The notes under the pieces are model-generated. The model ran no database searches. It was not told the DNA's origin and was given only the letters and a program-made list of their open reading frames with translations. The position numbers and the translations under genes are program-made. From the NCBI GenBank assembly GCA_048013815.1, contig CM106585.1:16802001-16866000 (forward strand): a stretch of DNA of 64,000 nucleotides, written 5' to 3'. Positions 3,159 through 40,350 of this stretch are shown piece by piece. Position 1 is the first letter of the stretch. Each line of letters begins with the position of its first letter. The DNA is from Setoptus koraiensis. Lineage: Eukaryota > Animalia > Arthropoda.

Positions 3159-3221
3159 GCAACAATTCGCCACAATTCGCTACAATTCGCAGCAGTTCGC
3201 AGCAATTCGCGACACAATTCG
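3159..3221 (+). repeat. 10-bp tandem array (GCNACAATTC)
   Basis: Read directly. Confidence 0.8.
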
Positions 3222-4286: not shown

Positions 4287-7200
4287 TGGCCCCAGTGCCG
4301 GCCCCAGTAGCAGCCAGACACTCGACACTGATGAAATGGGGCGAAATAGTTGAAACTTATTGAGGCGACCAGCCTACGTGACTACCTATTGGTCGGCCGT
4401 TTCGGTGGGCCCGAGGCTCGCCGACACCAACCAAAAGCATGAATCGCTCATCAGCTCGAGCCGCGTCCAATTGCCGCCAGTCGTTTTGTCGGCCGGCCAG
4501 CGTCGTTTTGTCGGACGAGCGCCATAAAACAAGCGTCATTTTTCACGCTCTCTGGCCAGCTCACGGTTTGTGTGGGCCCTAATGACGCGTCTAGGCGCCG
4601 CAGCGCCGCCAATGCCAAGTGCCAAATGTCGCCCCAATCCCAATTGCCCCTGCCAAGCGGAGCCTCGAAAGTGGCTCGTGCCGTCAGTGACAATCTTGAA
4701 TATGAGAGCACAGCCAGGAATTTGTGTCGCTGACGGTGCTCTCGGCCGAACAGCCGAACAATTCGGGGCCCCATTTTGGCGCAATCATCGCATCGATTCA
4801 TTACGCGCGAGCCGCCAAGAGCCGCCAAGAGTCGCCGCTGTCGACCCACGCTCGCCCGTTTCTATATACGAACCCATATAAGAAGCCACGGGCCCGAGCG
4901 CGAGCCGGCCAGGCCGGCAGTTAAGTGAAGCGTACGCTGCCCGTCGGCCGCACACGATCGGACCGGGAGCAGCGGGCCGGTCCTGGTGGCGGTCTGGCGG
5001 CGCTCGTCTCGGGCCGGGTCGCAGTGTGGCGGCACTCGGCTCGGGCTGTGGTGCGCGGTGCGCACGGTCGTAACGCGTCCCCACCCGCTTCACTCCGCCG
5101 GGCCGGCGCGGCTCCAAGGGGCTCTGTCGGGCCGACAGGCCCGCCGATACTCCGATCAGTCGGCAATGTCCGTGCACAGTCCACGGTGCGGGACAAAGTC
5201 CGGCGGGGCAGCCGCATTTCGCTCAGAATGCCCTTGGCCGTCCGTTGTCACAATGGCCTTGAGGCGCGGACCAAGGTGAGCGGCGGGCCGGGCCGCGGTG
5301 CGCCGAGCTCCAGCGCGAATCAAATGCGATCAGCGCAAATCAAATCCGCTTGCAGCTAATATGATTTTGCGGCCGCCCATATTGGCGCACGGACAGCGCC
5401 AGAAATATAAGGACGCGAAGAGTGAGTGCGCCTCATTAGTCTTTAGATCGTATTTCGCCGTATCTCGTCGTTGCGACGGCGGCCCCAACCGAGCAATACT
5501 CGGCGGGTATCGACCGGGCCTTTGTTTGTGCTGCTAGCGGCCATCGGACATCGGCCAGCGATTGGGGCCCGCCGGAGCGGGCCCCCATTGCGGCCAGCAA
5601 GCCAATCATGCCAGACGCACGGCTGGCTAATTCGGCGCTGTCCACTTTGTTGGCTCGCTCGCTGGAATGTTGCTGTCAATTGGCGCTGGGAATTATATTA
5701 CCAGCGCCAGCGGGCCGGTTGCGTTAAGTAATGGCATCACCGCAAGCAAAACCAACAGCGGACAATAATGGGGCTCCCACTGGACGGATTGTTGGTCGGT
5801 TTGTTTGGTTGGTGCGCTCGGGCGGCGCCGTCGCGCTGGACCGGCCGCCGGCCCGCCGGCCCACCGACCAAGCGCCGGCCACAACAAATAAGCTGTCGCT
5901 GTTGTCGTTGTTGTCGTTGTCGCTGTCTCCCCTAATGAGCCCGCGTGGCGCCGGCCAATCTAATGATGGTCGCAACTAATTAGAGCGGCCCATTAGCCGC
6001 GCACAATCGACGTGTTTATTTTACAGCGACAGCAGCGCCAACAACGGTGACCTTTACACGGACAGCGGCGTTATTCAATGTCGCGCGCGCCGCTTTTTCA
6101 GCGCTCGTGAGGTGTTGGCTCGCCGGGCCCCATTGACCACTCTGGCTGCGCTGGCCAGTTGCGTTTTCGCAGCGACTCGGCGCGGCCTCTTGCGGCTGAT
6201 TTGAGGAAGCCTTCGGCCGGCTTGTGCTCGAGTTGGGCCGCTCGGCCCGCTCGATTGTCCCCACCAAATTGGCCGGCCCACGAGAAGAAGCGGCCCGCGA
6301 GTTCGGACGAGAAGCGGCAGCATTCAGCCGGCGAAACGCGCCCGCACGGCACTTGTCGGCCACAGTCGGGCTGCCGGAGTGCGACGTTTCATGGGGCCGG
6401 TATGTCGGAGTCGACTTATAGTGTGTGAGTTATAGAGCCACGAAGTGTTGCGCCGGGTTGCATATGAAAATCAGTTTCATCACGCATGAATTGACGCGCT
6501 TTGCTACTTTGGGGCCCCGACTTTTGATAACGTTTTGAGGACAGTTTAGAGAGGCTTAGTGCCGTTTGTGGCACAACAACTGGCGCGCTGGCGACACCTA
6601 ACGATAAGCTGCGCGTCTTGCGACACCGTCGTATCGACAATAACGGTTCGCAGCGACAGCAATAACGGTTTGCAACGACAACGGCGCCAGCGACAACGAC
6701 AGCAACAACAGCGACGGCAACAACAGCAACAACGACAACATCAAAGTGTCACTCTAGTTGGCCAGCCAACGGCATCGGGCCGTCAGTATCGGGCCGACCG
6801 AATCGGGCCGACGGTATCGGCCGGCCATATAGGGCCCCAATATCGTGAGCAGCTGTCTATTGTTGTCGCGACGCTTGTCAGCGTGGCTGCAGTGCTTTAT
6901 TGAGGGCCAACTGTGGCGATGGGGCGAGCGGCAAGTGGCCAGACCGGCCAGACCGGCCAATATCCTGGCAGCATCCGCCAGTTGGCGCCAACGAACCACT
7001 TTGGGCCCAATCGTGCCACTTCGGGCGCACGGCGGCCCGGATTGGGTGTCGCTGAAGGCGGCAAGTGGCTCAAAAGCGAGCCACTCGGGCCGGTGCGCCC
7101 GTCCGGCCGGCCAGTCGTGTCCAGCGAGTGGAAAATTTGCACTTGCAGCCAGTGCGGCCCGCTGGCCAGACAAGTGCAGTTGAACTGGCCACTGGCGCCG

Positions 7201-9859: not shown

Positions 9860-10944
9860 GATAATGATGATGGTGATAATAATAATATCAGTAATATATA
9901 TAGTGGGCACTGCTAATAATAGTGTGTATGTAACGTATAATGGCGCAACCGCTCGGGCGCGTCCGCGACACTAGCACCCGCCACTTGCAGCGCCCCTCAA
10001 TTAGATTGCTGGTGGCGCCGCCGAGCCGAAAATTGCTGCCGCTCGCTCGGGCTTGTCGGGCTCGTCGGGCTTGTCGCGCTCGCCGGGCCCCGATGCGGCT
10101 CGTGCAAGCTCAAATGTTGGCGCTCGGCGCGCTTAATCCGCTCGTGTCGCCCGATTCTCGCGCAATTCGCTCGCGTCGCCCAATTCTCGCAATCCTCGCA
10201 ATCCGCTCAATTGGCGCGCCCGCCGTGACGAGCGCAACTGGCGCAGGGAGCCGGCTAAATGGCAAGATTTATGGCCATGTTATTGGCCCGACCAAGTGAT
10301 ACCGTTCGCCGCGAGCCTCGGCCCAGAAGCGCGATGGGGCCCGTCGACTGCTGTTTGCGAGCGGATATATACGTGTGTGTGTGTGTGTGCGTGTGTGAGA
10401 GGGCTCGCCAGATATATATTATGCCGGCGCTACATATATTATGGCGTGTTGCTCTTGTCGGGACTGTTGGTTCGGCTCGGGCCGCTTATTGCCGTTCCGG
10501 CGCGACTGTCGGGCCGGCGATTTTCAATTTAATAATGGCTGCAGTTTTGTTGGCTGACAAATTCACTTGCTGTTGTTGTTGTTGCGTCATGCTCGCTCGT
10601 TAGCCGCTGATTGTTGTTGGCTGTATCCGATGCTGGCGCTGCTGCTGCTGTCAAACCAAACAAGTTGCTGTTTAGTTAAACGAGTACGAGTCGCTGTTCA
10701 ACTATCCGAGTCGCTGATCGGGCCGCTGACGCAAGCGAATCTTGCTGCAAATGGATATAAATGCCTGGCTGCAAGGCAGGGGGGCGAGGGTGGGGGGCGA
10801 AAGGAGACAGGGGCCCCAAGAGACGGGTGCCGGGTTAGGTGAGAAGAGCAGTTCAGGTTGAAGTGTGAATTACGCAATGTCGTCGTGCTGTGTAACTGAT
10901 ACTAATACTGGTGCACAGACACAACTGGCTTGTTTGTTGTCGGT

Positions 10945-11100
10945 CGCCAGTTGTTGTCGTCGGTTGTTGCCGGTTGTTGCCGGTCGTGGTCGGTTGTTGC
11001 CGGTTGTTGCCGGTGGTCGTCGGTTGTTGCTGGCGGTTGTCAGCAACAACAGCAACAACAACAGCAACAACAACAACACCGGCAACAGCAACAACCGGCG
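10945..11100 (+). repeat. 10-bp array (CGGTTGTTGC) followed by a CAA/CAG trinucleotide tract
   Basis: Read directly. Confidence 0.85.
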
Positions 11101-26242: not shown

Positions 26243-27336
26243 TGAGCCCTCCAGCGACCCAACAAGTGAGTCGCTGGTGGGCCTGGCCTAGCGCCGGCTG
26301 GCAAGCCAACTGGCAAGCTAGCTGGCTGGCAAGCCAGCAAACAATGATGAGAGAGAGAGTCTCGCAATGTGCAACAGCGACAAACAACGGCACACAACAA
26401 GTTGTTGTTTGAAATGGTTTGACTCAATTATTGTGTGTGCTGTTGCCTATTGCCGATCATCATGTTTCACTGTTTTGGTTAGCTGCTCGGTGCGGCGCCG
26501 GCTGAGCCAGCAGCCTGCAGCGGCAGTGTATTATTATGTAACAGCGGCGGCGGCGGTGGCGATGATGGCGGCAGTTGCATCGGCGGTTGTTGTTGTTAGC
26601 GAGCACTGCTCCCACAGCGCGGCGGGCATGCGAGTCGGGCGAGCTGAAATAGGCATCGGGCGGCCGAAATAGACGAGTCGGGCATACGACGAGTCGGGCA
26701 AACTCACATAAGAGTCGGGCAAACTCTCATGCGAGTCGGCCAGCTAAAACTAGGGACGCCAGCTAATGGTTGAATCGGGAAAAAAGTTGAACCGTATTGT
26801 TTTGTCTCTGCCTCGCCAGCGAGTCTCGGCGCTGCTGATGTTCGGGCTGATAGCTGTCGCAGCAGCGTCTGACAGTGTCTGATAATGTAGGCTGAACCGT
26901 TGGCCAGCCGCACAACAGCAACAGCAAGTCAAGTGAGCAAGTCACGGCGACTCGCCAGCATCCAAATCAAATTGTTGATATATTGTTATTATCGCCAGCG
27001 AGCGCATTTGCACATTTCGCCCGCCGCCAGAATCGCCTCGCCGCACCGCTCGTCCGCTCTCATCGCCGCTCCGATCGCCGCTCGTCCGCATTAATCGCAA
27101 GTTGCAGCGTCTGAAGCATCGCCGTCAAGAATCGTCTAGTCGCACCGTCAAGAATCGCCGAGAATCCGCTGACCGTCCGCCGTCAAGCCGCCCAAATCCA
27201 ATGATACAAGCGCAGTGCAGATACCAGCAAACAACAGCAAGTCCGACAATCTAGGCCACCGAGCCACCGCAAGCCAGCAGCCAGAGAGCGGCCCCAGCAG
27301 CCAGAAACAGCAGCCCCGCCGACAGAGCGGCCCGAC

Positions 27337-28325
27337 ATGGACATCATCGGCCAGTTCAAGGGGGTCAAGGGCTTCATAAAGCCCCAGACCTGCATTATCG
27401 ACAATCACGTATTTCGGCTCCACTACCGGGCCTCGTCGCTGTTGCTGCTCATATTCAGCGCGCTCGTCACGGCCCGACAATATTTTGGCGATCCCATCGA
27501 TTGCATATCCAAAGACGACATTCCGTCCGAGCTGCTGGACACCTTCTGCTGGATTCACACCACCTTCAGCCTGGAAAGTGCCTGGAACAAGACGGTGGGC
27601 ACTGAGGTGCCCTACCCGGGCGTAGACAAATACACGCCCGGCGAGAAGCGCGTCTATCACGCCTACTATCAGTGGGTCTGTTTTGTGCTATTCTTTCAGG
27701 CCATTCTGTTCTACATACCCCATTATGTTTGGAAGGCCGTCGAGGCGGGCCGCATCAAGGCCATTAGGTCGTCGCTGTCGGAACCCATTCAAAAAGACAG
27801 CGAAAAACGCGAACAAAAACAATTGCTTGTGACATATTTAGACAACAGCAAAACGCACCATACGGGCCCATTTTATTGTTATGTAACATGCGAGATATTT
27901 AATTTAGTTAATGTTATCTCGCAGATGCTCATGATGGACAAATTTCTTGGGGGCCAATTTTCAACGTACGGCTGGCAAGTGTTACAATTCACCGAATGGG
28001 ATTGGTCAGTTCGTTATGATCCCATGATCAAGGTATTTCCGCGCCTAACAAAGTGTACCTTTCATCGGTACGGATCATCGGGCGACGTACAGAGGCACGA
28101 CGCAATGTGCATATTGCCCATTAATATCATCAATGAAAAAATCTATATTTTCCTATGGTTCTGGTTCTATTTTTTGGCCGTTATAAGCCTATTGACACTA
28201 GTGTACAGATTCACCACCATAGCCTCATCAAGAGTTAGAGCTCACCTGTTGCATCAGCGAGCCATGTCGTTGGCGGACAGAAAGGACATTGACACTATTG
28301 TTAGAGAGACAGACATTGGTGATTG
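27337..28325 (+). CDS. Innexin (gap-junction protein, inx2/ogre-like), exon 1 of 2
   Basis: IDNHVFRLHY, QYFGDPIDC, YYQWV, FPRLTKCTFHRYG and CILPINIINEKIYIFLWFWF are innexin motifs. Ends GAT TG|GTGAGT (phase-2 donor at 28326). Confidence 0.95.
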
Positions 28326-28448
28326 GTGAGTACCTGTTGAATATATTAAACTATTATATTTCAGTTTGTCATCGCTACACAATCGCGCAAGATCCACACA
28401 CAGTTTGTGGCACAATTTGTGTGACGCGAACATCAGTTATCCGATCCC

Positions 28449-28510
28449 TAGTTTTTAGTCACTAAATTTAGTACGAAATTTTAGTACGAAATTTTAGTGG
28501 CTCAAAACTA
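28449..28510. repeat. Imperfect 18-bp inverted repeat enclosing TTTAGTACGAAA direct repeats
   Basis: TAGTTTTTAGTCACTAAA (28449-28466) pairs with TTTAGTGGCTCAAAACTA (28493-28510), 2 mismatches. Confidence 0.7.
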
Positions 28511-28589
28511 AAGCGCGCCTAGTCGAGTCGACCCTTCGGCCTCCTTGGCCGATCGTTCGAGCCGCATAAATGCGGCCAGTTTCGCTACG

Positions 28590-28730
28590 AAATGCGCTCG
28601 CTCGAGCCGGAAAAAACGCTCGCTCTAGCCGAAAAATGCGCTCATCTAGTCGGAAAAATGCGCTCGCTCGAGCCGGAAAAAACGCTCGCTCGAGCCGGAA
28701 AAAACGCTCATCTAGTCGAAAAATACGCTC
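28590..28730 (+). repeat. Degenerate ~21-23-bp tandem repeat, about 6 copies
   Basis: Unit approximately AAATGCGCTCGCTCGAGCCGGAA, read directly from the sequence. Confidence 0.85.
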
Positions 28731-28931
28731 CGACTGAACGCCCGAATGCGGTTAGTCCCGCTGCAAATACAGTGGCCGAACGTGTGCCAATAAGGCCGCA
28801 CTAAACGATATTGCGGCCTTGATGTGGGCGCGTCCAAACCATTGGGCCGCCATAACAGTGATCAGATTAACCAATTGTTATGTCATGATTGCAATTGTTT
28901 TTGCGGTCGCCAACAATATCGGTCGCCACAC

Positions 28932-28966
28932 ATATGTTATAGACAACATATGTGTCTATAACATAT
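28932..28966. repeat. Near-perfect 35-bp AT-rich palindrome
   Basis: ATATGTTATAGACA pairs with TGTCTATAACATAT (14 bp) around ACATATG. Confidence 0.8.
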
Positions 28967-29762
28967 ATGTAGAGAATACGAAATTTTACATATAATTAAA
29001 TGTCGCGCTTTGCAGCAGCAGCAGCAGACGTAGAGGATAATATCTCGCTTGATTCACGAGTAATCAGCGATAATCAGCGATAATAAATGATCTCGATTGA
29101 AGGGCCGAAAACGGAAACACGCGATTGACACATGACCCACCGGCCTGACTTATGACACACAGCAATGTAACGTGACACATGCCGAGCTTACAGCGATTGC
29201 GAAACTCTTAGCTGGTTGCGCCCATGGGTCCTCTGGACGTTCGCTCGTTGACGTTCTTAGAGAATTTTTATCTGCGTCACGAATCTGGCAGCAGCGTTTC
29301 AAATCTTTGACAAGATATCTCTGCGAAATCTGTGCGAAAATCAGATGTGTGATGATTCGCGAAAACAGAAACAAGTGACGCCGAAATGTTGTTGTTTGCT
29401 TCGCTGGCTCGACGGGCTTCTCCGGCAATTCAGTCCATTGGCCCAGTGCAATGTTGTCACATTATGCTGTGTGTTATTAAATATTTTGCACCAAATATTT
29501 CAGCAATTTTTGTGTAGCGTGTGCACTTGAGTTTCAATGTCAGCCTATCGCATCAGATGATCAGTTTGCTGCCGCTGATCATACGCCGCTCGAGTTGGCT
29601 AATGGGCGATAATACATTTATCGGCCCATCCAGCTAGGCGAGCGTGTATATATATGCTGATTCTGCACGCCTGGAACTAGAGCAATCTGTCACAGAGAGC
29701 CATTGATAGTTTCAGAAATCACAGCGAGCCGCAATAGCAGAGAGCGGCCTTGAGTTGCAACC

Positions 29763-30060
29763 ATCCGAAAACTTTTGAAAGCGTCAGAAAGCGTCAGAAA
29801 ACGTCCGAAATCACCCGAAATCATCCGAAATAATCTGAAATCACCCGAAATCGTCAGTTGAGTCATTTGTGAGTCGTCGGTCAATTAGCGCGTCAGTCGT
29901 CAGTGCTAATTGGTCGCTTAATCGAGCGCAACCGCGCGAAATCCGGCGAGAGCAAGCGAAAGCAGCGAAATCCAACGAAAGAAGCGAAATCAAACGAAAG
30001 CAAGCGAACGCAGCGAAACCCAACCAAAGCAGCGAAACCCAGCGAAAGCAAGCGAAATAA
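29763..30060 (+). repeat. Two 10-bp arrays (CCGAAATCAY; AGCGAAAGCA-like) upstream of the maltase ATG
   Basis: Read directly at 29763-29852 and 29945-30060. Confidence 0.8.
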
Positions 30061-30095
30061 AGTCGACAAGTGTCAGCCAGCAACAGCGAAGCAAG

Positions 30096-31988
30096 ATGAG
30101 GACGCGCCAATCTCTAGCCGCGCTCGCGGTCGCCCTGGCGTTCGGCTGCCTGCTCGCGGCCGGCCCGTGCTCGGCCCTGCCGGACCTGGCCACGGACCCG
30201 GCGCTAAAGCTGGACCACGTGAAGCTGAGCGACGCGGCCCGGCAAGAACTGGAACAGATCGAGTGGTGGAAAAAGACAAACTTTTATCACATATACGTGA
30301 GGAGTTTCAAAGACACCAACGGCAACGGCCAGGGCGACCTGAGGGGCATCATCGAGCAGTTGGACTATCTCAAGATGATAGGCGTCGAGACGCTGCTCAT
30401 GTCGCCATTTTACAAGTCGCCCATGCGGGACGCCGGTTACGACATTAGCGACTACGAGGACATAAACGAGCTGTACGGCAACATGTCCGACTTTGAGGAG
30501 CTGGTGGCGGGCGTGCACGGGCGCCAAATGAAACTTGTTGTGGATTTTGTGCCGAACCATTCCTCGAATTTGCACAAGTGGTTCAATTACAGCGAACGGG
30601 CCCTGTTAGAGCCAGAGAAATACGGCAAATACAAGGATTATTACATGTGGTCCAATTCTACCCGTTTTCACGATCCAAAATACGGCGGCCGGCCAACAAA
30701 TTGGATATCGTTGTTCGGTGGCGAGACGGCGTGGCGTTGGTCGCCCGTTCGCAAAGAGTTTTATTTGCATCAATTTTTGCCCGAGCAGCCCGATTTAAAT
30801 TTGCGCTGTGAGCATGTTCGCGAAGAATTCAAAGAGATAGCGCGATTTTGGTTGCGCAAGGGCGTAGACGGATTGCGGGTCGATGCGGTGTTGCACTTTT
30901 TGGAGGACGCGCAAATGCGCGACGAACCCCAAGATCCCGACTGGCAGCCCTGGTGGAACCCGTACGACAGGTTGTTGCACATATTCATACGGTCGCTAAA
31001 GGAGAGCGCTAGCGTTGTGAAAGACTGGCGCCTGGTGGCTGACGAGCCCGAATTCGGGGGCAACCGAATCATCATAACGGAAGCGTACGATCCCATACCG
31101 TCCATACTGAATTATTACGGGCCCAGCCAGCATGACAAGTACGCCGATATGCCGTTCAATTTTGAGCTGATGGCGTTGCGTCACAACAAGACATTGCGAC
31201 CCGATCAAGTGGTTCAGACCATCATGAACTGGATGAATGCCACAGAGGAAATGGGCTGGCACAAGGAACACGAAGCGGTGATGCCGTGGACCTGTTGGGT
31301 GACGGGCAATCACGACAACATGCGCCTGGTGAACAGAATTGGCCACCAGAATGTCGATTCGTTCATGTGGCTAGTGTATATGCTGCCCGGGGCCCCCGTC
31401 ACTTATTATGGCGACGAAATAGCGTTGCACGACATTGATTTCAACAAGATACCCGCCAAGACACTGCAAGAGGGCGAACCTACCCGACTGATATTCCGCG
31501 CTCCCATGGCTTGGGACTGGTCACAACCGTCGGGCGGCTTCTCAAAATCGGCCGATCTGTGGCTTCCTATGAACACAAACTATCAACACAACAACGTTAT
31601 GTCGCAACTCAGCACGCCCGGCAAGACAAATCTGAAAAATTTCATTAGGGGCGCCAAGTTGCGTCAGACATATTTGCATACGCTTGTGTTTGGCGATTAC
31701 ACATTTTACAGGAATCAAAAGCGCACATCGGCCATCTTTTCCATGGCTCGCCTGTCAGACAAATCGCCCAGTCTCATGCTACTGATCAATTACGACGATT
31801 ATTTCACCGAACCGGTGCGCCTCGAGCCCGCTCAGCTCACCAGCGTGCGCCAGTATCCGGTGCCCAAGCGCGGCAAGGTGCTCATGGTGAATTACGACGC
31901 GGGCAGCGTCAAAGAGGGCCAACTGGTCGAACTGGACGGCCTCGTGCTGGAGCCCAACCAGGCGGTCGTGCTCGAGCTGGAGAAGTAA
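30096..31988 (+). CDS. Secreted alpha-glucosidase/maltase (GH13), intronless, 630 aa, nested in the innexin intron
   Basis: Signal peptide; WWKKTNFYHIYVRSFKD, DFVPNH, LHQFLPEQPDLN; catalytic-type residues present in GLRVDAV (Asp), IITEAY (Glu) and GNHD (Asp); YYGDEI. Confidence 0.95.
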   Translation: MRTRQSLAALAVALAFGCLLAAGPCSALPDLATDPALKLDHVKLSDAARQELEQIEWWKKTNFYHIYVRSFKDTNGNGQGDLRGIIEQLDYLKMIGVETLLMSPFYKSPMRDAGYDISDYEDINELYGNMSDFEELVAGVHGRQMKLVVDFVPNHSSNLHKWFNYSERALLEPEKYGKYKDYYMWSNSTRFHDPKYGGRPTNWISLFGGETAWRWSPVRKEFYLHQFLPEQPDLNLRCEHVREEFKEIARFWLRKGVDGLRVDAVLHFLEDAQMRDEPQDPDWQPWWNPYDRLLHIFIRSLKESASVVKDWRLVADEPEFGGNRIIITEAYDPIPSILNYYGPSQHDKYADMPFNFELMALRHNKTLRPDQVVQTIMNWMNATEEMGWHKEHEAVMPWTCWVTGNHDNMRLVNRIGHQNVDSFMWLVYMLPGAPVTYYGDEIALHDIDFNKIPAKTLQEGEPTRLIFRAPMAWDWSQPSGGFSKSADLWLPMNTNYQHNNVMSQLSTPGKTNLKNFIRGAKLRQTYLHTLVFGDYTFYRNQKRTSAIFSMARLSDKSPSLMLLINYDDYFTEPVRLEPAQLTSVRQYPVPKRGKVLMVNYDAGSVKEGQLVELDGLVLEPNQAVVLELEK

Positions 31989-32468
31989 CACTATATATAG
32001 CATAGCATCATATATAAAATTATACACATAACATTACATAACATTACATAACATTACATAGCGCAGCACAACAATAATAATCACCGATATTGCACAAAAC
32101 AAACCCGTTCCGTCGGCCCGCCGGACAAATTAATCAGCGTGTGCACTTGGTGCGTCGGCAAAAACCGGCCACCGCCGGCCATGTGCTGGCCGCAAGCTCG
32201 CCAGCTCGCCAACTCGAATCGTGAGGGTTGATTGAACCCTCGCCAGACACATGTTTGTTTGCCGACATTTTTTCTGTTCGCTGCGAATCGTTTGGTTACT
32301 GCTCGTGAATCGGTTGTGCGAACAACAGCAACTACCCACCGATTCGCAGCCAACAGCGCGTCGAACGGGCACCGTTTCCCATAGTGCACACAATACCGAT
32401 CGGCGTGATGCTGCCGACTCGGTGTCGCGAACAACCGCCGCCGCAACCGTTTGTTGCGTCAGTTCGAA

Positions 32469-32503
<35 letters not shown>

Positions 32504-34770
32504 TGTGCGGTTGCCGGTCATTCGACGTTCGGCGTTCGACAGGTGAGCGCTGCCTCTGATGCTCATCGACAATGTATTTGCATCTCTGTGCGCTCATACC
32601 GTGGCATATGTGGTTATATGTGCCTCTATCCCATCTTCTACATCGTATTGTGAGCCAACAAGTGCACTGGGCCCACACTTCAACTCAACGGCGCCGGCTC
32701 ATCAGTGGCTAGGTGACGCCATTGCCAGTTACTCGGCGGCTCGAGCCACCGATTGGCCCCGGCCGGCCGATGGGCGAAACAATGTCGACAAGAACAATGG
32801 ACAACCCAAGCAACGGTTGCCAGGTTACGTAAGGTTGCTGTGTAAAAGACAAAACTTTGCTTTCGCCAACTGCAGCCAACAGGTAATTTGGCAAATTGAG
32901 CTTATCAAGCCCGACGTAAAGTGGCGCTCTGTTGTCCATTGTGCCATGCTCACAATCAACATGGGCCGCTGCATTTTGTAGCGCCATTTCATGTAGCGAA
33001 AATCAGTGCTGAAATCAAAGTTCATTATCGCTCCTCCCAATTACTATTATTTGTTATTGTTGCGCAATGTTGTTGTTGTTGTTGCACACATTTAAAATAT
33101 CCATGTTGACCTATCGGGACATGATGCCATCACACGGCATTGCATCTAATCTGATGAACGTTATGTCCGCCCGGCCCCACTTGTTATGCGCTGTTGTGTT
33201 CTGGCTCGACACTCTCTTCTATATTGTGTTTGCTCCAAACAAGAGACTCTACGCCATGCAGTCGCTATACTAGAGAGAGTTTGATTGCGTCACCATGACG
33301 CTATTGTTGTTCATTGTCTATTGTAAACACTCACTTACACAATGCTGTTCATATGATACACGACGACAACGGCGACGACGACGACGACGAAGATGACTTG
33401 TTGTGAGAGTTCGAGAAACAAAATATCTCAATCGAGCCAATACGGCACAACAATGATACTCATGTAGCAGTGGTATGGTTGTTGTTGTTGCTCAAGTCGC
33501 TGGCTCTCTTCGGTTTCTTTCGCACTCATCAACAAGTCCAACAACTTGATCTAATCATCAGATAGTGGCAACAAAAGTTGTTGCTATCGTCATTTCATGT
33601 TGTCAACAATGATAATAATAATAACTAAAAGATACAAAGTCGACAAAAATAATTTGCTCTCTGTGTCTCTGGGACTGTTGCGTAATTTCACTTTTAGAAC
33701 TCCATAATAGCAACAACTGTTGAGCAGCAGCAGCAGGACAACTTTTGGTCGTTTGCTCGCCTGGAGACCCTGTGACCACCATAAAAAGTCGCTCACTCTC
33801 TTGTTGATGGCTCCAAGAAGCCATTGCCGCATTCTGAGAATAGCCGGCCAAGTGAAGTGGAGATACTTTATTTAGCTCACTTCTTTCTGGCCTGATGCAG
33901 TGCACTTTTGTAGGCACTGGCATACAGGGCATCTGTGCACCGGCAGCCAGTTTCAAAATAGATAAAATTTACCTGTTGTTGTTAGTTAGTCAGTTTCAAT
34001 TGGAGCAAGCCAAACGCTTTCTTGTTGCAGCAACTGTTGTTGTTGTAGGATACATAAATTTTTGACTAATAGTCTCTCAGTAGTCAAACGGTGTTAAGAT
34101 GTCCGCTACTGGGAACCGTCGTCGCAGTTGCCATCGTGATTCACTCGGCTCATATCAAACTACACATACACATACACACAGATTTGTTGTTGGCCACTGG
34201 CAACCAATTAAGACGATAATAATAATATAAATCTATCTAGCTGGTGTAGTCGCTCATTTTGGTGACAAGACAACCACCAATCGCAACAACAGCCAGTCAA
34301 CAACTGCTGCCTCTGCTTCACCAACAACAGCCAACAACAGCCAACAACAGCCAACGACAGTAACAACTCAACAATTAAACTATTACTCACAAGTCAGTCG
34401 ATAATACTGACGCATTACTCTCTATAAGCTAGCCAACATTTTGTCAGACAACATTTTGTCTGTGAGCTGCATGCCAAAACTCGTCGCTACTGGTGGTTTA
34501 TGGTTGTTGCTCGTATGTGACTCTCACTGTAATCTTGTCGCAGTGTGACTTTCTCGAGACGATAATGATCTTTTTAACTGATATCTGACTGACGGCTGCT
34601 GAAACTGTTTGTGTTTGTGAAACTGCTCATGTTTCACTTGTACCTAGACCAATACTTGCTGCCCATGTCCATGAGCCTTGTAGCCAAGTGATTCTTCAGC
34701 AAGACTCATTGATCGACACGGCTTGTTGTCGCGATTGGCTCGCGATGGACAGACAAGAAGCATGAGATGA

Positions 34771-34805
34771 TTTCCACAATTGATCAGTTAGATCAATTGT
34801 GGAAA
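34771..34805. other. Perfect 15-bp hairpin, extendable to ~34763..34812
   Basis: TTTCCACAATTGATC-AGTTA-GATCAATTGTGGAAA; outer TGAGATG/CTTCTCA pairs with one mismatch. Confidence 0.7.
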
Positions 34806-34837
34806 CTTCTCAAGTGATCAGCCAATATCTATCAGAG

Positions 34838-34854
34838 GTGGGTCATTGACCCAC
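34838..34854. promoter_or_regulatory. Perfect IR-1 nuclear-receptor element (EcR/USP-RXR type)
   Basis: GTGGGTCA-T-TGACCCAC. The core GGGTCA n TGACCC matches the RGGTCA-n-TGACCY IR-1 consensus. Function not shown. Confidence 0.5.
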
Positions 34855-35184
34855 ACAAACCGGACCCGCCAACTGAGTGTCGTTAGGCCGAGCATCGCGC
34901 CAATTTGGGCCCGCTCGTGCAGACCAAAATTGCAAGTCACCCAAAAGTTTGTTGTAACAGTTAATTACCTAATCAGACCAAATGTAATATCTAATCTCAA
35001 CAGTTGACCAACAACAAAATACAGGATACACAACCGTCGTGTCACAACAAAACAAACATTTTTTTTTTTTTATCTTTGAATTTGGCGCCCCCAGCCGCAG
35101 CCTTTCTCATAAATGATCTCTGACACTTGCGTCCAATGAGCACAATCCCCATGCGCTCGTCATTGCGAAGCCTTGATATCAGTA

Positions 35185-35582
35185 CAGGGTGTTTACGTGG
35201 AAACGTCGACAACACATTACCAAGCCTACGGTGTCCCACTCTGTTTTTGGTAGTCTCAGATTTTTCCTGTAGGGTTCTCGTCGCCGACAGATGCACCTGA
35301 TTTGAAATATAATAGCGCCCTCTATCAGCCGTATCGAACTAAACTTGGTGTAACTATTCGAGTGAGCACACAAAATAGCTCAAACACAATTCAGGTACAA
35401 GTTGTGCATTGCTGGCACAAATCAATGCACCAGTTTCCGCAATATATTATGCGTTACTACGCATGCACGTTGGATCTGCAAGCACAAAACTCACAATTGT
35501 GCTGCACAATTTAGTACCAGTGCACTGTAGAGGTCAGTGTGGAACATTCCAGTATGGTCGACACTTCCACGTAAAAACCCTA
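35185..35582. mobile_element. Degenerate non-autonomous Tc1/mariner-like element (MITE), 398 bp
   Basis: 31-bp terminal inverted repeats with 25/31 identity (CAGGGTGTTTACGTGGAAACGTCGAC.. vs ..GTCGACACTTCCACGTAAAAACCCTA), flanked by TA on both sides (35183-35184 and 35583-35584). Confidence 0.65.
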
Positions 35583-35820
35583 TATGATATATGGTTTACA
35601 CCCAGAGGGCGTAATCTCGTTTCTCTGTGCATACGCACACGGGTCTCTTTCCGCGTGCACACACGGCGCACATACAGCACAGCGCTACAGTGCTGAATTA
35701 TGATAGCTTTAGTGCTTGTGTGTGTAGAGCTCTAACGCACAATTAGAGAGATCGCGCGCACAAGACAGACCAAATCACGCACACAAACAGTTTCTACAGT
35801 TGTGTGTAGTACAACAACTC

Positions 35821-35872
35821 GCACAGAGAGAGGGAGAGAGAGAGAGAGAGACTGAGAGGGAGAGAGAAAGAT
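35821..35872 (+). repeat. GA-repeat tract upstream of the HTH gene
   Basis: (GA)n-rich run about 150-190 bp before ATG 36015. Confidence 0.7.
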
Positions 35873-36014
35873 TCCGAAAGAAACGGGATTACACCCAGTA
35901 TTATATATTGGCCATATGTATTATCGAAAACAATTTTATTTTACTATTAGCTAACAATAATATTCGAGATAATTTATAATTCTCAAGGAGCTCTGACAAT
36001 TTGCACTCGGTAAT

Positions 36015-37301
36015 ATGAGCAAATGTAATAGCGACGCGGATGAAGGAGATTCTGATAAGCCAAAGGTTTACAGGACGCCAATTGAGATCGAGGTGCGCGT
36101 TAAACAATTGCATGAATTACACTATAGTTATTCGCAGATAAAAAGCACCATATTAAAAAGCACAAGTTATAACATCTCCAGCGGAACTATCGCTAGAATT
36201 GTAAATAAAAAAGGGAGATGGCAGGTTAACAAAGAAAAAACAAAACGTAATGGCAGACCAGTGAAGAGAACAGATAACCTAATTGAACAAGTTATTTCTA
36301 TGGCCACTGATACGGAAAATCCCGTCTCTCAAAGACAAATAGCTAAAAGGCTCAACATATCCTCAACAACAGTGAATAGGATCTGTCGTGAGGATATTGT
36401 CAAGGTTGATCCGAAATTGGTTGGTCAAACTAAACCGTTGGACCATTGCATCATCAAGGCTAAGGCCAATGAACAGAACGACGCTATCATAGAGACTGCT
36501 GCAGCTATTATAGCCGATGGGGAGCCTCTGAGCCAAAGATTGATTGCCAAAAGGTTGGGGATATCAAACTCCAACGTCAATAGAGTTATTAATATGTATC
36601 TACCAGACCTGAAAGAGACAATTCGTTTACACAAAACACCCTCCAGGTCTTCATCTCATCAAAAAGTACCAACGAAAAAAGCTAGAAACAGCAACAAAAA
36701 GGACCTTTCTTCGGATGAAAATGATGGTGACAATGAATCATCTCAACACTCTTGTACATCCAAAAGTAACAAGAGAAATTCTTCGGAGTCGCTTGATCCA
36801 CAGCAGACACCTAAGTCTTCAAAAACAAAATCCACGAGTGTGAAACAACCGCATGGGCCGGACAAAGTGTCCGCAGCCGCTATACAGATCAAACTGTCTA
36901 CCGCTTTAGCCCAGCATCAACAATCACCAAAACAACAACAGGCTATCCTCGAAAAACAGAGGGCCCAACTACAAAAACAACAAGAGGAGATATTTCGACA
37001 GCAACAGGAATTGCAACGTCAGCAACAAGATCTTGAGAGAAAGCAGCAGCAGCTGGAAATCGAACGACAACAACAACTGGAGCTAGAGAGGCAACTAACA
37101 GAGAATCAGTACGGATCTGGAATGATGGTTACCTACTCGACACCGCCTAATACAAGGGCACAACAAGCAAGGGCCACAATGAATTCTCCCACGCACATGA
37201 GTGCTGTAGTTCAGCAACAAGTTCCTGCCACAGAAGATCAAACTTATTGGTCGATGCAACAAACAAACTACATACCAAACAATAGTCATAAGCCCACTTG
37301 A
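36015..37301 (+). CDS. Tc1/mariner-type HTH DNA-binding protein without catalytic domain, with Q-rich coiled coil (428 aa), nested in the innexin intron
   Basis: First HTH-like segment, GRP linker (RNGRPVKRT), second HTH SQRQIAKRLNISSTTVNRICREDI and a duplicate SQRLIAKRLGISNSNVNRVI. Followed by a S/K-rich region and a Q/E-rich heptad stretch. AATAAA at 37423-37428. Confidence 0.8.
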   Translation: MSKCNSDADEGDSDKPKVYRTPIEIEVRVKQLHELHYSYSQIKSTILKSTSYNISSGTIARIVNKKGRWQVNKEKTKRNGRPVKRTDNLIEQVISMATDTENPVSQRQIAKRLNISSTTVNRICREDIVKVDPKLVGQTKPLDHCIIKAKANEQNDAIIETAAAIIADGEPLSQRLIAKRLGISNSNVNRVINMYLPDLKETIRLHKTPSRSSSHQKVPTKKARNSNKKDLSSDENDGDNESSQHSCTSKSNKRNSSESLDPQQTPKSSKTKSTSVKQPHGPDKVSAAAIQIKLSTALAQHQQSPKQQQAILEKQRAQLQKQQEEIFRQQQELQRQQQDLERKQQQLEIERQQQLELERQLTENQYGSGMMVTYSTPPNTRAQQARATMNSPTHMSAVVQQQVPATEDQTYWSMQQTNYIPNNSHKPT

Positions 37302-37506
37302 TTAAACAACTGAGATAACTACACACATAAGAACTAACTGTCAGTCTTTAAAAACCAAAAACAATCCTTACCAATGAGCTTGACTTGAACGCAATTCATT
37401 TGACTATTTGAATTTTCCAAAAAATAAAAATATGCACGTGCCCCAATTAATTAACCTAAAATATTCCGTGCTTACGGATTTAATCTTTTCTCTCATCTGT
37501 CAACAG

Positions 37507-37633
37507 GTTCCTCATCTACCTGCTCGGAAAGAACATCCAACCTCTTAATTACAAGGAAGTTATTGAGGATTATGCAACGGAGTTATCGAAAAAACAAAAA
37601 AATGGCAAAACCGACTTCTTGGAGAATGCGTAG
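37507..37633 (+). CDS. Innexin exon 2 (C-terminal), completing a 371-aa protein
   Basis: Pyrimidine tract and CAACAG|G acceptor at 37505-37506. The phase-2 join gives GDW-FLIYLLGKNIQPLNYKEVIEDYATELSKKQKNGKTDFLENA* (TAG 37631-37633), matching the conserved innexin GDWFLLxxLGKNIxP tail. Confidence 0.88.
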
Positions 37634-38031
37634 GTATGAGTTCTGGAGCTCTAGAAGTATTACTATCCAAAAACAACGATAGTGATATATTCTCATGATC
37701 GTCATTACGTCTGGTGACAGATGGAGCTTTCAATGTAGTCATTTAAATGCCACCCACATCATGTTTCATAATAATCATCCACACATAGAGTATATGTTCA
37801 CTGCCGAAACAGATGCTAGAGATCCTAAAAATCCGGTGGTCTTTAGACCATGTTTTGCCACTTAAAGTTACGGAAAAACCTAACAGGAACATGTACGAAT
37901 TGCTCATCCATGTACTATGCTGAACACTATACCATCACGAAATAATGAACGTTCTCATCGAAAAAAAGATGTCTGGTCGAGTGTTGACAGAATTGTAATA
38001 TAATAATGATAATAAATTTTTACAAACTAGT

Positions 38032-40350
38032 TTAATCTACATTCATCGTTGTCTTCTTGGATTGATCCATAGTACTCTGCTCTTTCACTAACAATATGGC
38101 ATGGTATATTTTAACTGCTGGACCCAGCTTGATGTTTAATATATCTACCAGATCTCTCTGATTCATAAGCATCAAAGATTGACCACATATTTGTTGATAT
38201 TCAAACAAGCAACCATTTCCTGCGCAGCCAGCTATACTATCTACAAACTGCTTAACTGCATCAGGCTTCCAATTATCCACATCTTCTATCTTGAACTGAC
38301 TTATCCTGTCTTGGGGCATCAATTTTTCAATAAGGTGTTGCCAATTAGAATTTATATTACTACTGGCGTCTGAGAGATTTTTGAGCGGCTGGGGAGACTT
38401 AGACTTCATATACGGAGGTTTTGTCCTACGTAATTTATCATCAGGTCCGCCACTAAGTAATGATGATCCTGGCAAAACTTTTCTCGCTGTACAGGATGGT
38501 TTGAAATTCATATCGTGTCTCGGTTTCTTTTTTCCTTTCTCATTATTAATTCCATTTGTGAAGGGCTCGTGCTTTCTTTTGCTCTGATCTTGTGACTTAT
38601 TATTTAATTGTGATATTAAATCTTCATTTTCCTCTTCGTCATCAGTATCTAAAACTTCTAAATCACCAAACTCATTGAGAGTAAACTTGAAGTCACACCC
38701 TTCCAAGGTCCCTACGCCATTAGACCATCTCAAAAGTTTTTTAGCTTGTTCATCTAACAAGGGTTTATCTGATGACTGACTTTGAGGTTTAGGTGCATGA
38801 GTTGTCGTCACAGTATGACTAGGCTGCGAGTTACGCTGTGGAACTCGCCCAACCGACACTACATCTCTACCGGAAGTATTTGTGGTGGTAACTGTGGCTG
38901 GTGCTGAAGTTGGTGGATGTGATTCATTGGTGGCAGCTTTTACTGTATTTGAGACCGCTGTTGCGCTGCTCTTATACCCAGTTAGCGAAGTGGTATTAGT
39001 GGTTGTGGTATTAATGGAGGTTGCCACCACCGTTGTACTAGTAACTGTTGAGGGAATTTGAATGGTCAGCAAGGTGCCAGACAGATTTAGATTGTGTCCT
39101 TGAAGTTGGGTCTTTAGCTGTGGGTTATTCTTGAGAAATTCCATTGAGGTGGGATGAAATTTGTTTGCTTGCGAAGTGAACTGACTCATGTCAGAGTTAT
39201 TTAGTGATGACATGGGTATCGCCATCAGCGTTCGACCGTCTGGTACCGGAACCATTACCATGGGTACACTTTTTGAAGAGTTCGGTAGTTTCATCTCACC
39301 GGCGGTGGCTTGGGCCGGTAAGTATATTGAACCAGCTGGGATATTGGTCTTCTTTGTTGAAGTGTTAACACCAGATACGACAGGAGATGAACTAGCGTTG
39401 CAATTTAAGGCTTTAAACGTATAAGATGTATTCTTGTTGAATAATGGAGCTGAGGCTGTTAGAGAAGCCGGTATTGTTTCAGCCATAGTATTCAGGCCTA
39501 AGCTAGCTTGAGAAGAGTCAACGAATGTAGCAGTAGTTGTATAAGTGGGTTGGTTGTATATATAGGTAGTAGTATTACAAGAATTTGTTACGTTTGATGG
39601 AATAGATGCAATTTGTAATGTATTATTAGCCAGCTCTTTTTCATTTGATAATATGCCTGCACTCAAATCTGACTTTGGTACAGTAACTCGTGATACCTCA
39701 CAGGAATCAGCATCAGTAACTTGATTTTTGTTCCATGAGGCATCTGAAGAAACTTCTGAAATTTTCTGAATGCTTCCATCTCGTTCGGGGTCTAGTTTTT
39801 CACTACAAGTCAACATGGGAGATGGAGTTCTATCATCAGGTTGTCGTGTAGTATTTGCATCGGCATTTTGATCAGGCTGTTCTCCGTCTGGATCTGTTTC
39901 ACTGGACGAGACTAATTTAGGCTGAGCAATATCTCCTCCTTCAACAGCTACTGGAGATGTAGATTGTTCATTGGATGTCGTCTTGTTTTCCGAACTTTGT
40001 GGGTCGGAGGGCATCTTGATGTGACTTGCTGGTGAGAGGGGTTGTCTTATAGGCGATGCTTGACATATATGCGAATAATCAAAGCTAAGGTCAGACGAAT
40101 CTCCCGTCAAATCCAATGGTGCAGATGAGTCAGTTTTATTGACGGAAGAGTCAGATACGGTAGCCTTCTGAGAAGGAACTGGTTTTTCTATTGTTGTGTT
40201 CTCCTTGGGCGTACTGGTATCATTGCAAGACTGATCTGACGACGATGAATCTTGCGAACTAGATGATGAAGATGATGATGATGTGCGCGTAGACTGATCC
40301 TTACTTTCGCTAGTCGTGTTAGCATTGTGAGAACATTGTTCGTCGGCCAT
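38032..40350 (-). CDS. L(3)mbt-like SAM-domain protein lacking MBT repeats (772 aa, single ORF)
   Basis: C-terminal Polycomb-class SAM (WKPDAVKQFV..QQICGQSLMLM..IKLGPAVKIY) plus LRWSNGVGTLEGCDFKFTLNEFGDLEVL, which resembles the N-terminal motif I recall from L3MBTL/l(3)mbt proteins. The rest is S/T-rich low complexity. Confidence 0.8.
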   Translation of the reverse strand: MADEQCSHNANTTSESKDQSTRTSSSSSSSSSQDSSSSDQSCNDTSTPKENTTIEKPVPSQKATVSDSSVNKTDSSAPLDLTGDSSDLSFDYSHICQASPIRQPLSPASHIKMPSDPQSSENKTTSNEQSTSPVAVEGGDIAQPKLVSSSETDPDGEQPDQNADANTTRQPDDRTPSPMLTCSEKLDPERDGSIQKISEVSSDASWNKNQVTDADSCEVSRVTVPKSDLSAGILSNEKELANNTLQIASIPSNVTNSCNTTTYIYNQPTYTTTATFVDSSQASLGLNTMAETIPASLTASAPLFNKNTSYTFKALNCNASSSPVVSGVNTSTKKTNIPAGSIYLPAQATAGEMKLPNSSKSVPMVMVPVPDGRTLMAIPMSSLNNSDMSQFTSQANKFHPTSMEFLKNNPQLKTQLQGHNLNLSGTLLTIQIPSTVTSTTVVATSINTTTTNTTSLTGYKSSATAVSNTVKAATNESHPPTSAPATVTTTNTSGRDVVSVGRVPQRNSQPSHTVTTTHAPKPQSQSSDKPLLDEQAKKLLRWSNGVGTLEGCDFKFTLNEFGDLEVLDTDDEEENEDLISQLNNKSQDQSKRKHEPFTNGINNEKGKKKPRHDMNFKPSCTARKVLPGSSLLSGGPDDKLRRTKPPYMKSKSPQPLKNLSDASSNINSNWQHLIEKLMPQDRISQFKIEDVDNWKPDAVKQFVDSIAGCAGNGCLFEYQQICGQSLMLMNQRDLVDILNIKLGPAVKIYHAILLVKEQSTMDQSKKTTMNVD

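What the first reader, a model, noticed from the sequence alone, without database searches (positions are those of the whole stretch)
27337..37633. Innexin gene whose 9.2-kb intron holds two complete same-strand genes
Exon 1 stops at GD-TG|GTGAGT (28325) without the conserved innexin tail. The exact tail (W-FLIYLLGKNIQPLNYKEVI..) appears at 37507 behind a proper pyrimidine tract and CAG acceptor, in the matching phase, giving a normal-length 371-aa innexin. No other innexin 5' exon lies between them. The intron (28326-37506) contains an intact maltase, an HTH gene and a MITE. Nested genes are usually antisense, so two sense-nested genes in one intron of an otherwise intron-poor genome is unusual. 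Host transcription would have to read through their promoters and poly(A) sites, implying transcriptional interference or mutually exclusive expression (inference).
Basis: partly seen in the sequence, partly recalled or inferred. Interest (0 to 1): 0.88.

Follow-up and report, generated by a model that had tools for sequence, protein, structure and literature searches.

The report
Innexin intron holding two sense genes
A mite gap-junction (innexin) gene is split by a 9.2-kb intron that holds two working genes on the same strand; an RNA-derived contig shows the splice, and relatives show the layout is old, but nesting of this kind is already well known in animals.

Summary
CDS 27337-28325 plus 37507-37633 gives a 371-aa inx2-type innexin that aligns without a gap to full-length homologues. 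A 1,882-nt RNA-derived contig of public run X3 starts on the tail exon at 37506. Its last 30 unmatched letters map uniquely to 28295-28324, so the 28325|37507 splice exists in RNA.

The intron (28326-37506) holds two intact, intron-free genes on the same strand. One is a GH13 maltase (30096-31988). The other is a tandem-HTH gene (36015-37301), whose transcript contigs are separate from the host exons.

The intron is specific to the clade. All ten relatives, including Fragariocoptes, stop at GDW. Halotydeus, Oppia and Centruroides orthologues have no intron there. In seven of eight relatives a same-strand maltase follows exon 1, so that nest is old. The HTH gene was found only in a congener, where it lies 200 nt upstream of an identical tail exon.

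The MITE was not confirmed. Read-through and transcriptional interference remain untested inferences.

Same-strand, single-exon nested genes are common in Drosophila (29% of nests). The scan has noted other same-strand nests elsewhere in this genome. I read this as a sound gene model and a new member of a known kind. The more interesting idea, untested here, is that nested genes protect this 3' intron from loss in a genome that sheds introns.

The parts
26914..27336 (+). Probable 5' UTR of the innexin mRNA (inferred, and only if it is collinear with the genome)
   Evidence: X3 record 13 has 1,412 letters on the exon-1 side of the junction. Counting back from 28325 gives 26914. Only the last 30 of these letters were shown by the tool.
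27337..28325 (+). Innexin exon 1 (CDS residues 1-329 plus two bases of W330), ending at donor TG|GTGAGT
   Evidence: ORF. Pfam PF00876, E 2.5e-111, profile positions 1-307 of 333. The donor is conserved as TG|GT(A/G)AGT in 7 related loci. X3 holds 0.90 of its sampled words.
28326..37506 (+). 9,181-nt phase-2 GT...AG intron, the last intron of the innexin gene
   Evidence: Junction 28325|37507 in the X3 contig. X3 depth is zero over 33801-35800. Apart from the two genes, the intron has no Rfam family, tRNA or ORF with a Pfam match.
28568..28743 (.).
   Evidence: the repeat finder family D1. No flanking terminal inverted repeats. No second copy in the window.
30096..31988 (+). Nested gene 1: single-exon secreted-type GH13 alpha-glucosidase (maltase), 630 aa
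   Evidence: Intact ORF. PF00128, E 1.6e-102, profile positions 2-438 of 446. Same-strand orthologues follow innexin exon 1 in L001, L003 (partial), L004, L005, L006, L011 and an ENA contig. Transcription is inferred from X3 word shares.
36015..37301 (+). Nested gene 2: single-exon tandem-HTH protein with a Q-rich tail, 428 aa. Transcript contigs cover 35891-37341.
   Evidence: ORF. HTH Pfam matches at residues 76-125 and 165-194. X3 contigs 35891-36702 and 36709-37341 are collinear with the genome, show no joints and are not joined to the tail exon. In the congener L007, residues 1-242 carry 81 nt differences but only 8 aa differences. ATTAAA at 37301 overlaps the stop codon.
37507..37633 (+). 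Innexin terminal coding exon (last base of W330, 41 residues, TAG)
   Evidence: Acceptor ...caacAG|G. The X3 contig starts here with exon-1 letters in front of it. In the congener L007 the tail is 41/41 aa identical, and all 9 nt differences are at third codon positions. L002 has a homologous tail exon 2.9 kb after its exon 1.
37634..37976 (+). Innexin 3' UTR, up to the end of the transcript contig
   Evidence: X3 record 13 ends at 37976. A convergent minus-strand gene ends at 38032.

Best explanation
This is one ordinary cis-spliced inx2-type innexin gene of a probable eriophyoid mite. Its last intron (28326-37506, phase 2, GT-AG) contains two independent, intron-free genes on the same strand: a maltase and a tandem-HTH protein. 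RNA polymerase II that starts at the innexin promoter must run about 9.2 kb through both nested units, and the spliceosome then joins 28325 to 37507. The nested genes are transcribed from their own promoters and end at their own 3' sites. The HTH mRNA ends near 37341, about 165 nt before the host acceptor. The intron arose in, or is kept only by, the clade that includes Fragariocoptes. The maltase has sat in it since early in that clade, and the HTH gene is a late addition. Shown: the splice, intact nested ORFs, separate HTH transcripts, purifying selection, and synteny in relatives. Inferred: read-through of the nested 3' signals in cis, own promoters for the nested genes, and any interference between the three genes.
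For: Splice junction in an RNA-derived contig. The joined protein aligns without a gap to homologues. These are the only innexin pieces in the window. Donor and acceptor are conserved in relatives. A same-strand alpha-amylase gene lies 0.6-3 kb after exon 1 in 7 of 8 relatives, with no tail exon in between. The congener L007 has HTH, then 200 nt, then the tail exon, then the same convergent SAM-domain gene. The tail exon differs only at synonymous sites, and the HTH domain has 81 nt but 8 aa differences. X3 has no depth in the non-genic intron and no joints between HTH and the tail. X2 DNA contigs tile 32201-38200 and break only at simple repeats. Both nested genes are single-exon, which is the known profile of same-strand nested genes (PMC3814207).
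Against: The junction rests on one assembled contig from one small run, and only 30 of its 1,411 upstream letters were displayed. The two raw RNA runs tried (X6, X9) held no reads of this organism, so there are no read counts, no estimate of how often the splice is used, and no view of the donor side (read-through or early polyadenylation after 28325). Pre-mRNA continuity across the nested genes was not observed. DNA continuity over 28326-32200 was not checked with reads, and X2 may be the sample the assembly was made from. In the 64-73% relatives the contigs end before any tail exon, so nesting of the maltase there is inferred and not seen.
Confidence: 0.85

Rival explanations
1. Trans-splicing. 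Exon 1 and the tail exon are transcribed as two separate RNAs, the second starting downstream of the HTH gene, and are joined in trans. No polymerase then has to cross the nested genes.
For: Two same-strand genes with their own 3' ends lie between the exons, and the HTH mRNA ends only about 165 nt before the acceptor. No pre-mRNA coverage of the intron is seen in X3.
Against: Absent intron coverage is normal for mature-RNA assemblies. The donor and acceptor are canonical cis signals conserved across relatives. In L002 the same intron is 2.9 kb with no maltase inside and looks like a plain intron. To my own knowledge, protein-coding trans-splicing of this kind has not been reported in mites.
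Confidence: 0.04
2. The spliced 371-aa form is a minor product. Most transcripts read past the donor to the in-frame TGA at 28327-28329 and end early (ATTAAA at 28345), giving a 330-aa tail-less innexin, so the nested genes are rarely crossed.
For: A stop codon lies directly behind the donor and ATTAAA lies 20 nt downstream.
Against: The assembled contig follows the spliced path at depth 17.4. The tail exon is 41/41 aa identical in a congener with 9 synonymous changes, so it is under selection as coding sequence. A TGA inside a GTGAGT donor in this phase follows from the consensus and is no signal in itself. Relatives have GTAAGT (TAA) likewise.
Confidence: 0.08
3. Assembly artefact. A misjoin between the maltase and the HTH gene brings an unrelated region next to exon 1, so the two genes are not really inside the intron.
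For: Short-read contigs of X2 do not bridge the microsatellites at 32461-32516 and 35817-35873. Region 28326-32200 was not checked with reads.
Against: The RNA junction requires exon 1 and the tail to be in one transcription unit. The maltase follows exon 1 directly, with no tail in between, in 7 relatives, and the HTH gene sits 200 nt upstream of the tail in the congener. Under cis-splicing both must therefore lie inside the intron, whatever the middle looks like. The X2 breaks are only at simple repeats.
Confidence: 0.03

Closest known systems
Same-strand host/nested gene pairs in Drosophila melanogaster (Lee and Chang 2013, PMC3814207)
   Same: A complete protein-coding gene lies inside an intron of another gene on the same strand. 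[quoted passage not shown] There is no exon overlap.
   Different: Here two unrelated genes share one intron, and it is the 3'-terminal intron of a gene in an intron-poor lineage. The maltase nest is conserved across a whole mite clade, whereas many fly nests are young. Expression relations are unknown here.
Introns kept in intron-poor genomes because they overlap other functional units (Giardia sense-antisense overlap, PMC6545626)
   Same: In a genome that has shed most introns, a surviving intron contains other genes. Precise deletion by recombination with cDNA would remove them.
   Different: In Giardia the overlap is antisense and the introns are tiny. Here the content is two sense protein genes in 9.2 kb. 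The L002 relative kept the intron without the maltase, so the 'lock' is not absolute. No genome-wide test was done here.
inx2-type innexins of chelicerates (Halotydeus destructor, Oppia nitens, Centruroides sculpturatus)
   Same: 61-66% identity to exon 1, the same length class (about 360-370 aa), and the same C-terminal GDWF..LL.KN..PLN tail.
   Different: Their genes have no intron at the GDW|F site. The window's gene instead lacks the intron near residue 230 that Oppia and Fragariocoptes have.
Other same-strand nests noted by this scan in the same genome (PTPA in ATG10 intron 1; NCOA6-like in MAO intron 1; ATG16 in YTHDC1 intron 1)
   Same: An intron-free gene inside an intron of a host gene on the same strand. 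The PTPA/ATG10 case was also reported as shared by distant mites.
   Different: Those are AI notes that I did not check. They concern first introns and single nested genes.

Membership tests
Innexin (PF00876), inx2-type | Match to the Pfam Innexin profile above the gathering score | tested here: met
   372.5 bits against a cutoff of 25. Exon 1 covers profile positions 1-307 of 333.
Innexin (PF00876), inx2-type | Complete C-terminal segment after the last transmembrane helix (GDWF..LL.KN..PLN), collinear with full-length family members | tested here: met
   The joined 371-aa protein aligns without a gap across the junction to 11 full-length homologues.
Innexin (PF00876), inx2-type | Orthology to chelicerate inx2 | tested here: met
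   The best named hits are all inx2 or inx2-like. In the tree it falls in a starred clade with Fragariocoptes inx2, within acariform inx2.
Intronic host/nested gene pair, same strand | The flanking host exons are joined in RNA | tested here: met
   The X3 contig joins 28325 to 37507.
Intronic host/nested gene pair, same strand | The nested gene lies wholly inside the intron, on the host strand, without sharing exons | tested here: met
   Coordinates 30096-31988 and 36015-37301 against intron 28326-37506. No joints between HTH and the tail exon.
Intronic host/nested gene pair, same strand | The nested gene is an independent, functional transcription unit | tested here: inconclusive
   HTH: separate transcript contigs and purifying selection. 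Maltase: an intact conserved ORF, with transcription only inferred from X3 word shares. Promoters and transcript ends were not mapped.
Intronic host/nested gene pair, same strand | Host transcription passes through the nested genes in cis | not testable with these tools
   This needs nascent or long-read RNA.
GH13 alpha-glucosidase (maltase) | Alpha-amylase catalytic domain at full length | tested here: met
   PF00128, E 1.6e-102, profile positions 2-438 of 446. Catalytic residues were not inspected one by one.
MITE | Terminal inverted repeats flanking a short non-coding element, and several copies in the genome | tested here: not met
   No flanking terminal inverted repeats in 28330-30100. 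No other copy in the 64-kb window. Genome-wide copy number could not be tested.

The most novel reading that the evidence does not exclude
The GDW|F intron is an eriophyoid-specific gain. It was possibly created when maltase-bearing DNA landed in the innexin coding sequence. It has then been 'locked' against the massive 3'-biased intron purge of this lineage, because precise removal would delete one or two genes under selection. If the other same-strand nests noted in this genome follow the same rule, nested genes would be a main reason why particular introns survive in streamlined animal genomes.
Probability: 0.3. Interest if true: 0.55.

Novelty: new member of a known kind. Interest (0 to 1): 0.3.

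Why it matters
In practice, it fixes a gene model that ORF-based or homology-based annotation gets wrong. All ten relatives in the protein database are recorded as 327-330-aa proteins cut off at GDW, and the Fragariocoptes entry is annotated 'partial'. In evolutionary terms, it gives a dated example of a nest that is old for the maltase and still growing with the HTH gene, in a lineage that otherwise sheds introns. This 3'-terminal intron is kept, while the intron near residue 230 that Oppia and Fragariocoptes still have is gone. That makes the idea that nested genes protect introns from loss testable across eriophyoid genomes. It is not a new mechanism.

Tried and rejected
1. A second innexin 5' exon or a decayed tail inside the intron: tblastn of the joined protein found only the two pieces.
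2. Raw RNA-seq of 'organism C' (X6, X9): no read was laid, so those runs do not hold this organism and give no test.
3. A search for spliced full-length protein in the 5.8-billion-protein collection found none for this species or its congener. The best hit is a 330-aa genomic ORF.
4. A search with the 41-aa tail found only the congener's ORF, P0122. Tail exons of the more distant relatives therefore could not be located, because their contigs end 0.6-1.5 kb after the maltase.
5. A search with the HTH protein found only the congener's protein, P0121.
6. Pfam on the 61-aa Fragariocoptes and 75-aa L001 maltase N-terminal fragments gave nothing. Pairwise BLASTP does support the Fragariocoptes fragment (IEWWKK..YHIY.RSF, E 2e-10).
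7. MITE: no flanking terminal inverted repeats and no second copy.
8. No Rfam family, tRNA or Pfam-matching ORF elsewhere in the intron.
9. The SRA accession numbers of the relatives appear in no paper of the library, so their species names are unknown.
10. The bacterial-type promoter and terminator scan is not meaningful for an animal genome and was ignored.
Full report
**The observation.** The ORF 27337-28329 encodes 330 aa that match Pfam Innexin from profile position 1 to 307 of 333 (E 2.5e-111). It stops at a TGA that is part of a consensus donor...GGT GAT TG|GTGAGT, with the exon ending at 28325. At 37507, behind ...ctctcatctgtcaacAG, the frame continues G|TTC CTC ATC TAC... to TAG at 37631-37633. 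Joining the two gives 1116 nt, or 371 aa. In a MAFFT alignment with 12 homologues, 11 of them full-length (Halotydeus, Oppia, Dinothrombium, Ornithodoros, Dermatophagoides, Limulus, Centruroides, Galendromus and others), the junction is gap-free: GDW|F[LV]..LL.KN..P[LI]N[FY]. tblastn of the joined protein against the whole window finds only these two pieces. No other innexin exon or decayed tail competes.

**RNA evidence.** Only one read-laying run was allowed, limited to 6,000 letters, so both splice sites could not be covered at once. I laid window:32201-38200 (acceptor side, HTH gene, 3' end) with X2, X3, X6 and X9.

- X3 behaves as RNA. It has contigs only over 35891-36702, 36709-37341 and 37506-37976, and zero depth over 33801-35800.
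- X3 record 13 (1,882 nt, depth 17.4, no mismatches) lies on 37506-37976 with its letters 1412-1882.
- The letters before that are 'loose', and the last 30 (CTATTGTTAGAGAGACAGACATTGGTGATT) occur exactly once in the window, at 28295-28324.
- The G at 37506 equals the G at 28325, which explains the one-base offset. With GT-AG the junction is 28325|37507.
- Logan contigs are built from 31-mers, and the two sides share only that one base. Junction-spanning reads must therefore exist.
- If the contig is collinear upstream, it starts near 26914, giving a 5' UTR of about 420 nt.
- X6 and X9 (raw RNA runs with the species label of X3) laid no read at all and give no test.
- X2 behaves as DNA. Its contigs tile the stretch and break only at simple repeats (32461-32516, about 34320-34360, 35817-35873). 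One 8.6-kb contig covers 35874-38200 and beyond. X2 may be the sample the assembly was made from.

**The nested genes.** The maltase ORF (30096-31988, +, 630 aa) has a signal-peptide-like N-terminus and a full alpha-amylase catalytic domain (PF00128, E 1.6e-102).

The HTH ORF (36015-37301, +, 428 aa) has two HTH motifs (residues 76-125 and 165-194, many overlapping HTH families) and a Q-rich tail. X3 transcript contigs cover 35891-37341 collinearly, with no joints and no link to the tail exon. HTH is therefore an intron-free, separately ended transcript. ATTAAA at 37301 overlaps its stop codon, and its contig ends 40 nt later, about 165 nt before the host acceptor.

X3 holds 0.45 of the sampled words of 30096-37950. 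The parts seen account for about 0.24. The remaining 0.21 (about 1.65 kb) must lie in 30096-32200, that is, most of the maltase. This is arithmetic inference and was not seen directly.

No AATAAA or ATTAAA follows the maltase stop for 2.3 kb. Nothing else in the intron matches Rfam, a tRNA or Pfam. The 'MITE' is not supported. There is a 22-nt tandem repeat (28568-28743) and two small palindromes, but no flanking terminal inverted repeats and no second copy in the window.

**Relatives.** The best hits to exon 1 are ORF-called proteins of 327-330 aa that all end exactly at GDW: P0001 (97%) and P0002-5, 7, 9, 14, 15 (64-73%), plus Fragariocoptes setiger 'Innexin inx2, partial'.

- In a maximum-likelihood tree these ten and the window form one clade (100/99) on a long stem, with Fragariocoptes as the first branch. 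The genome is thus a probable eriophyoid.
- All eight loci with DNA show TG|GT(A/G)AGT at the same codon.
- The orthologues in Halotydeus (two tandem paralogues, L008), Oppia (L009) and Centruroides (L010) have no intron there.
- Oppia has introns near window residues 67 and 231. Fragariocoptes keeps one near 228. The window and its closer relatives have lost it.

The GDW intron is therefore specific to the clade: either a gain, or a retention where three outgroups lost it.

**Age of the nest.** A same-strand alpha-amylase gene follows exon 1 in seven of the eight relatives. The distances from the end of exon 1 are:

| Locus | Distance to alpha-amylase |
|---|---|
| L001 (congener, 86.5% nt) | 1.4 kb |
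| L003 (Fragariocoptes; N-terminal fragment at the contig end, IEWWKK..YHIY.RSF, E 2e-10) | 2.3 kb |
| L004 | 1.3 kb |
| L005 | 3.0 kb |
| L006 | 1.1 kb |
| L011 | 0.6 kb |
| ENA contig | 0.9 kb |

No tail exon lies between exon 1 and the maltase in any of the six loci whose DNA could be read (the ENA contig gave no DNA). In the four contigs that reach past the maltase, none lies in the 0.6-1.5 kb after it, where the contigs end.

Maltase identities (59, 57, 45%) rank as the innexin identities do (73, 72, 68%), as expected if the two genes diverged together.

Only L002 lacks the maltase. There the tail exon lies 2.9 kb after exon 1, behind ...caaccAG. L002 sits deep inside the clade, so this is a secondary loss or relocation, and the intron survived it.

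The congener's second contig, L007, shows HTH (508 aa), then 200 nt, then the tail exon, then the same convergent SAM-domain gene. The tail is 41/41 aa identical, with 9 nt differences all at third codon positions. HTH residues 1-242 have 81 nt differences but only 8 aa differences. Both are therefore under purifying selection. HTH has no other homologue among 5.8 billion proteins, so it is a late, lineage-restricted addition to an old nest.

**How it most likely works.** It is a conventional cis-spliced long intron. Polymerase from the innexin promoter crosses both nested units, the nested 3' signals are bypassed in those transcripts, and the spliceosome pairs the strong donor with the acceptor 9.2 kb downstream. 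The nested genes use their own promoters.

Both nested genes are intron-free. This is the known profile of same-strand nested genes and removes competing splice sites (72.5% single-exon in Drosophila, against 37% for antisense nests; PMC3814207). The non-canonical maltase 3' region may ease read-through (inference).

Three things were not tested: how often the splice is used, whether the three genes are expressed in the same cells, and whether there is interference. In the one informative sample all three are present, with innexin at depth 17.4 and HTH at 10.8-12.5.

The rivals are trans-splicing, a dominant truncated isoform and an assembly misjoin. They are listed with their tests, and none is favoured by the data. 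Under cis-splicing both genes must be inside the intron whatever the assembly of the middle looks like. The maltase directly follows exon 1 in relatives, and HTH directly precedes the tail exon in the congener.

**Comparison with what is known.** About 10% of D. melanogaster genes are in nested structures, and 29% of nested genes are on the host strand (PMC3814207). Same-strand nesting is thus the minority orientation but common.

Eriophyoid genomes are intron-poor: 84% of Aculops lycopersici genes are intronless, intron gains are minimal, and 5' introns are preferentially kept, which was attributed to 3'-biased removal through cDNA recombination (PMC7738191).

Against that background, a kept and possibly gained 3'-terminal intron is mildly notable. 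The natural explanation is that precise removal would delete the maltase. A similar argument has been made for the few introns of Giardia (PMC6545626).

The scan's own notes list other same-strand nests in this genome: PTPA in ATG10, an NCOA6-like gene in MAO, and ATG16 in YTHDC1. I did not check them. They suggest that this is a recurrent feature of the genome and not a singular case.

**Verdict.** The 'unusual' label and the MITE are not. This is a new member of a known kind. Its interest is modest (0.3), and the intron-locking idea is the part worth a genome-wide test.

Noticed in passing
L010 (Centruroides sculpturatus KZ494802.1) 3001-4086 and 5622-6734: Two intronless inx2-like genes lie inside the range of a + strand gene (389-aa product, CUT_N/VERL_C) that runs over the whole 7-kb locus. 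In the scorpion the innexins themselves appear to be same-strand nested genes.
   Followed up: no
L003 (Fragariocoptes) 10895-10976; L009 (Oppia) 3934-4000; window residue about 228-231: Fragariocoptes and Oppia share an intron at or near the same innexin position. The window and its closer relatives lack it: their exon 1 is continuous there. A short empty intron was lost while the gene-bearing one was kept.
   Followed up: partly
window 36740-36804 against L007 1865-2088: The congener's HTH protein is 508 aa against 428 aa here. The difference lies in the Q-rich, low-complexity second half, while the HTH half is 99% identical.
   Followed up: partly
window 29926-30060: An array of 7 copies (spaced 10 or 19 nt) of GCGAAA-rich repeats ends about 35 nt before the maltase ATG, in what should be its 5' UTR or core promoter.
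   Followed up: no
window 33001-33400 and 34201-34400: The DNA word depth of X2 rises from about 150 to 700-800 and to 2,765. These stretches are CAA/GTT-type and CCAACAACAG simple repeats shared with many other places.
   Followed up: no
window 34358-34641 against L007 215-481: This is the only non-coding stretch of the intron that still aligns with the congener (76% over about 290 nt). It lies about 1.4 kb upstream of the HTH start and may be a regulatory element.
   Followed up: no
runs X6-X14 and X6, X9: The 2026 RNA runs offered under the same species label as X3 held no read of this locus in about 1.6 billion letters each. Either that label is not specific to this mite, or those samples are of something else.
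   Followed up: partly
window 38032-40350 (-): A convergent 772-aa Ser/Thr-rich protein with a C-terminal SAM domain (weak Pfam match) ends 56 nt beyond the end of the innexin transcript contig. It is 86% identical in the congener.
   Followed up: no
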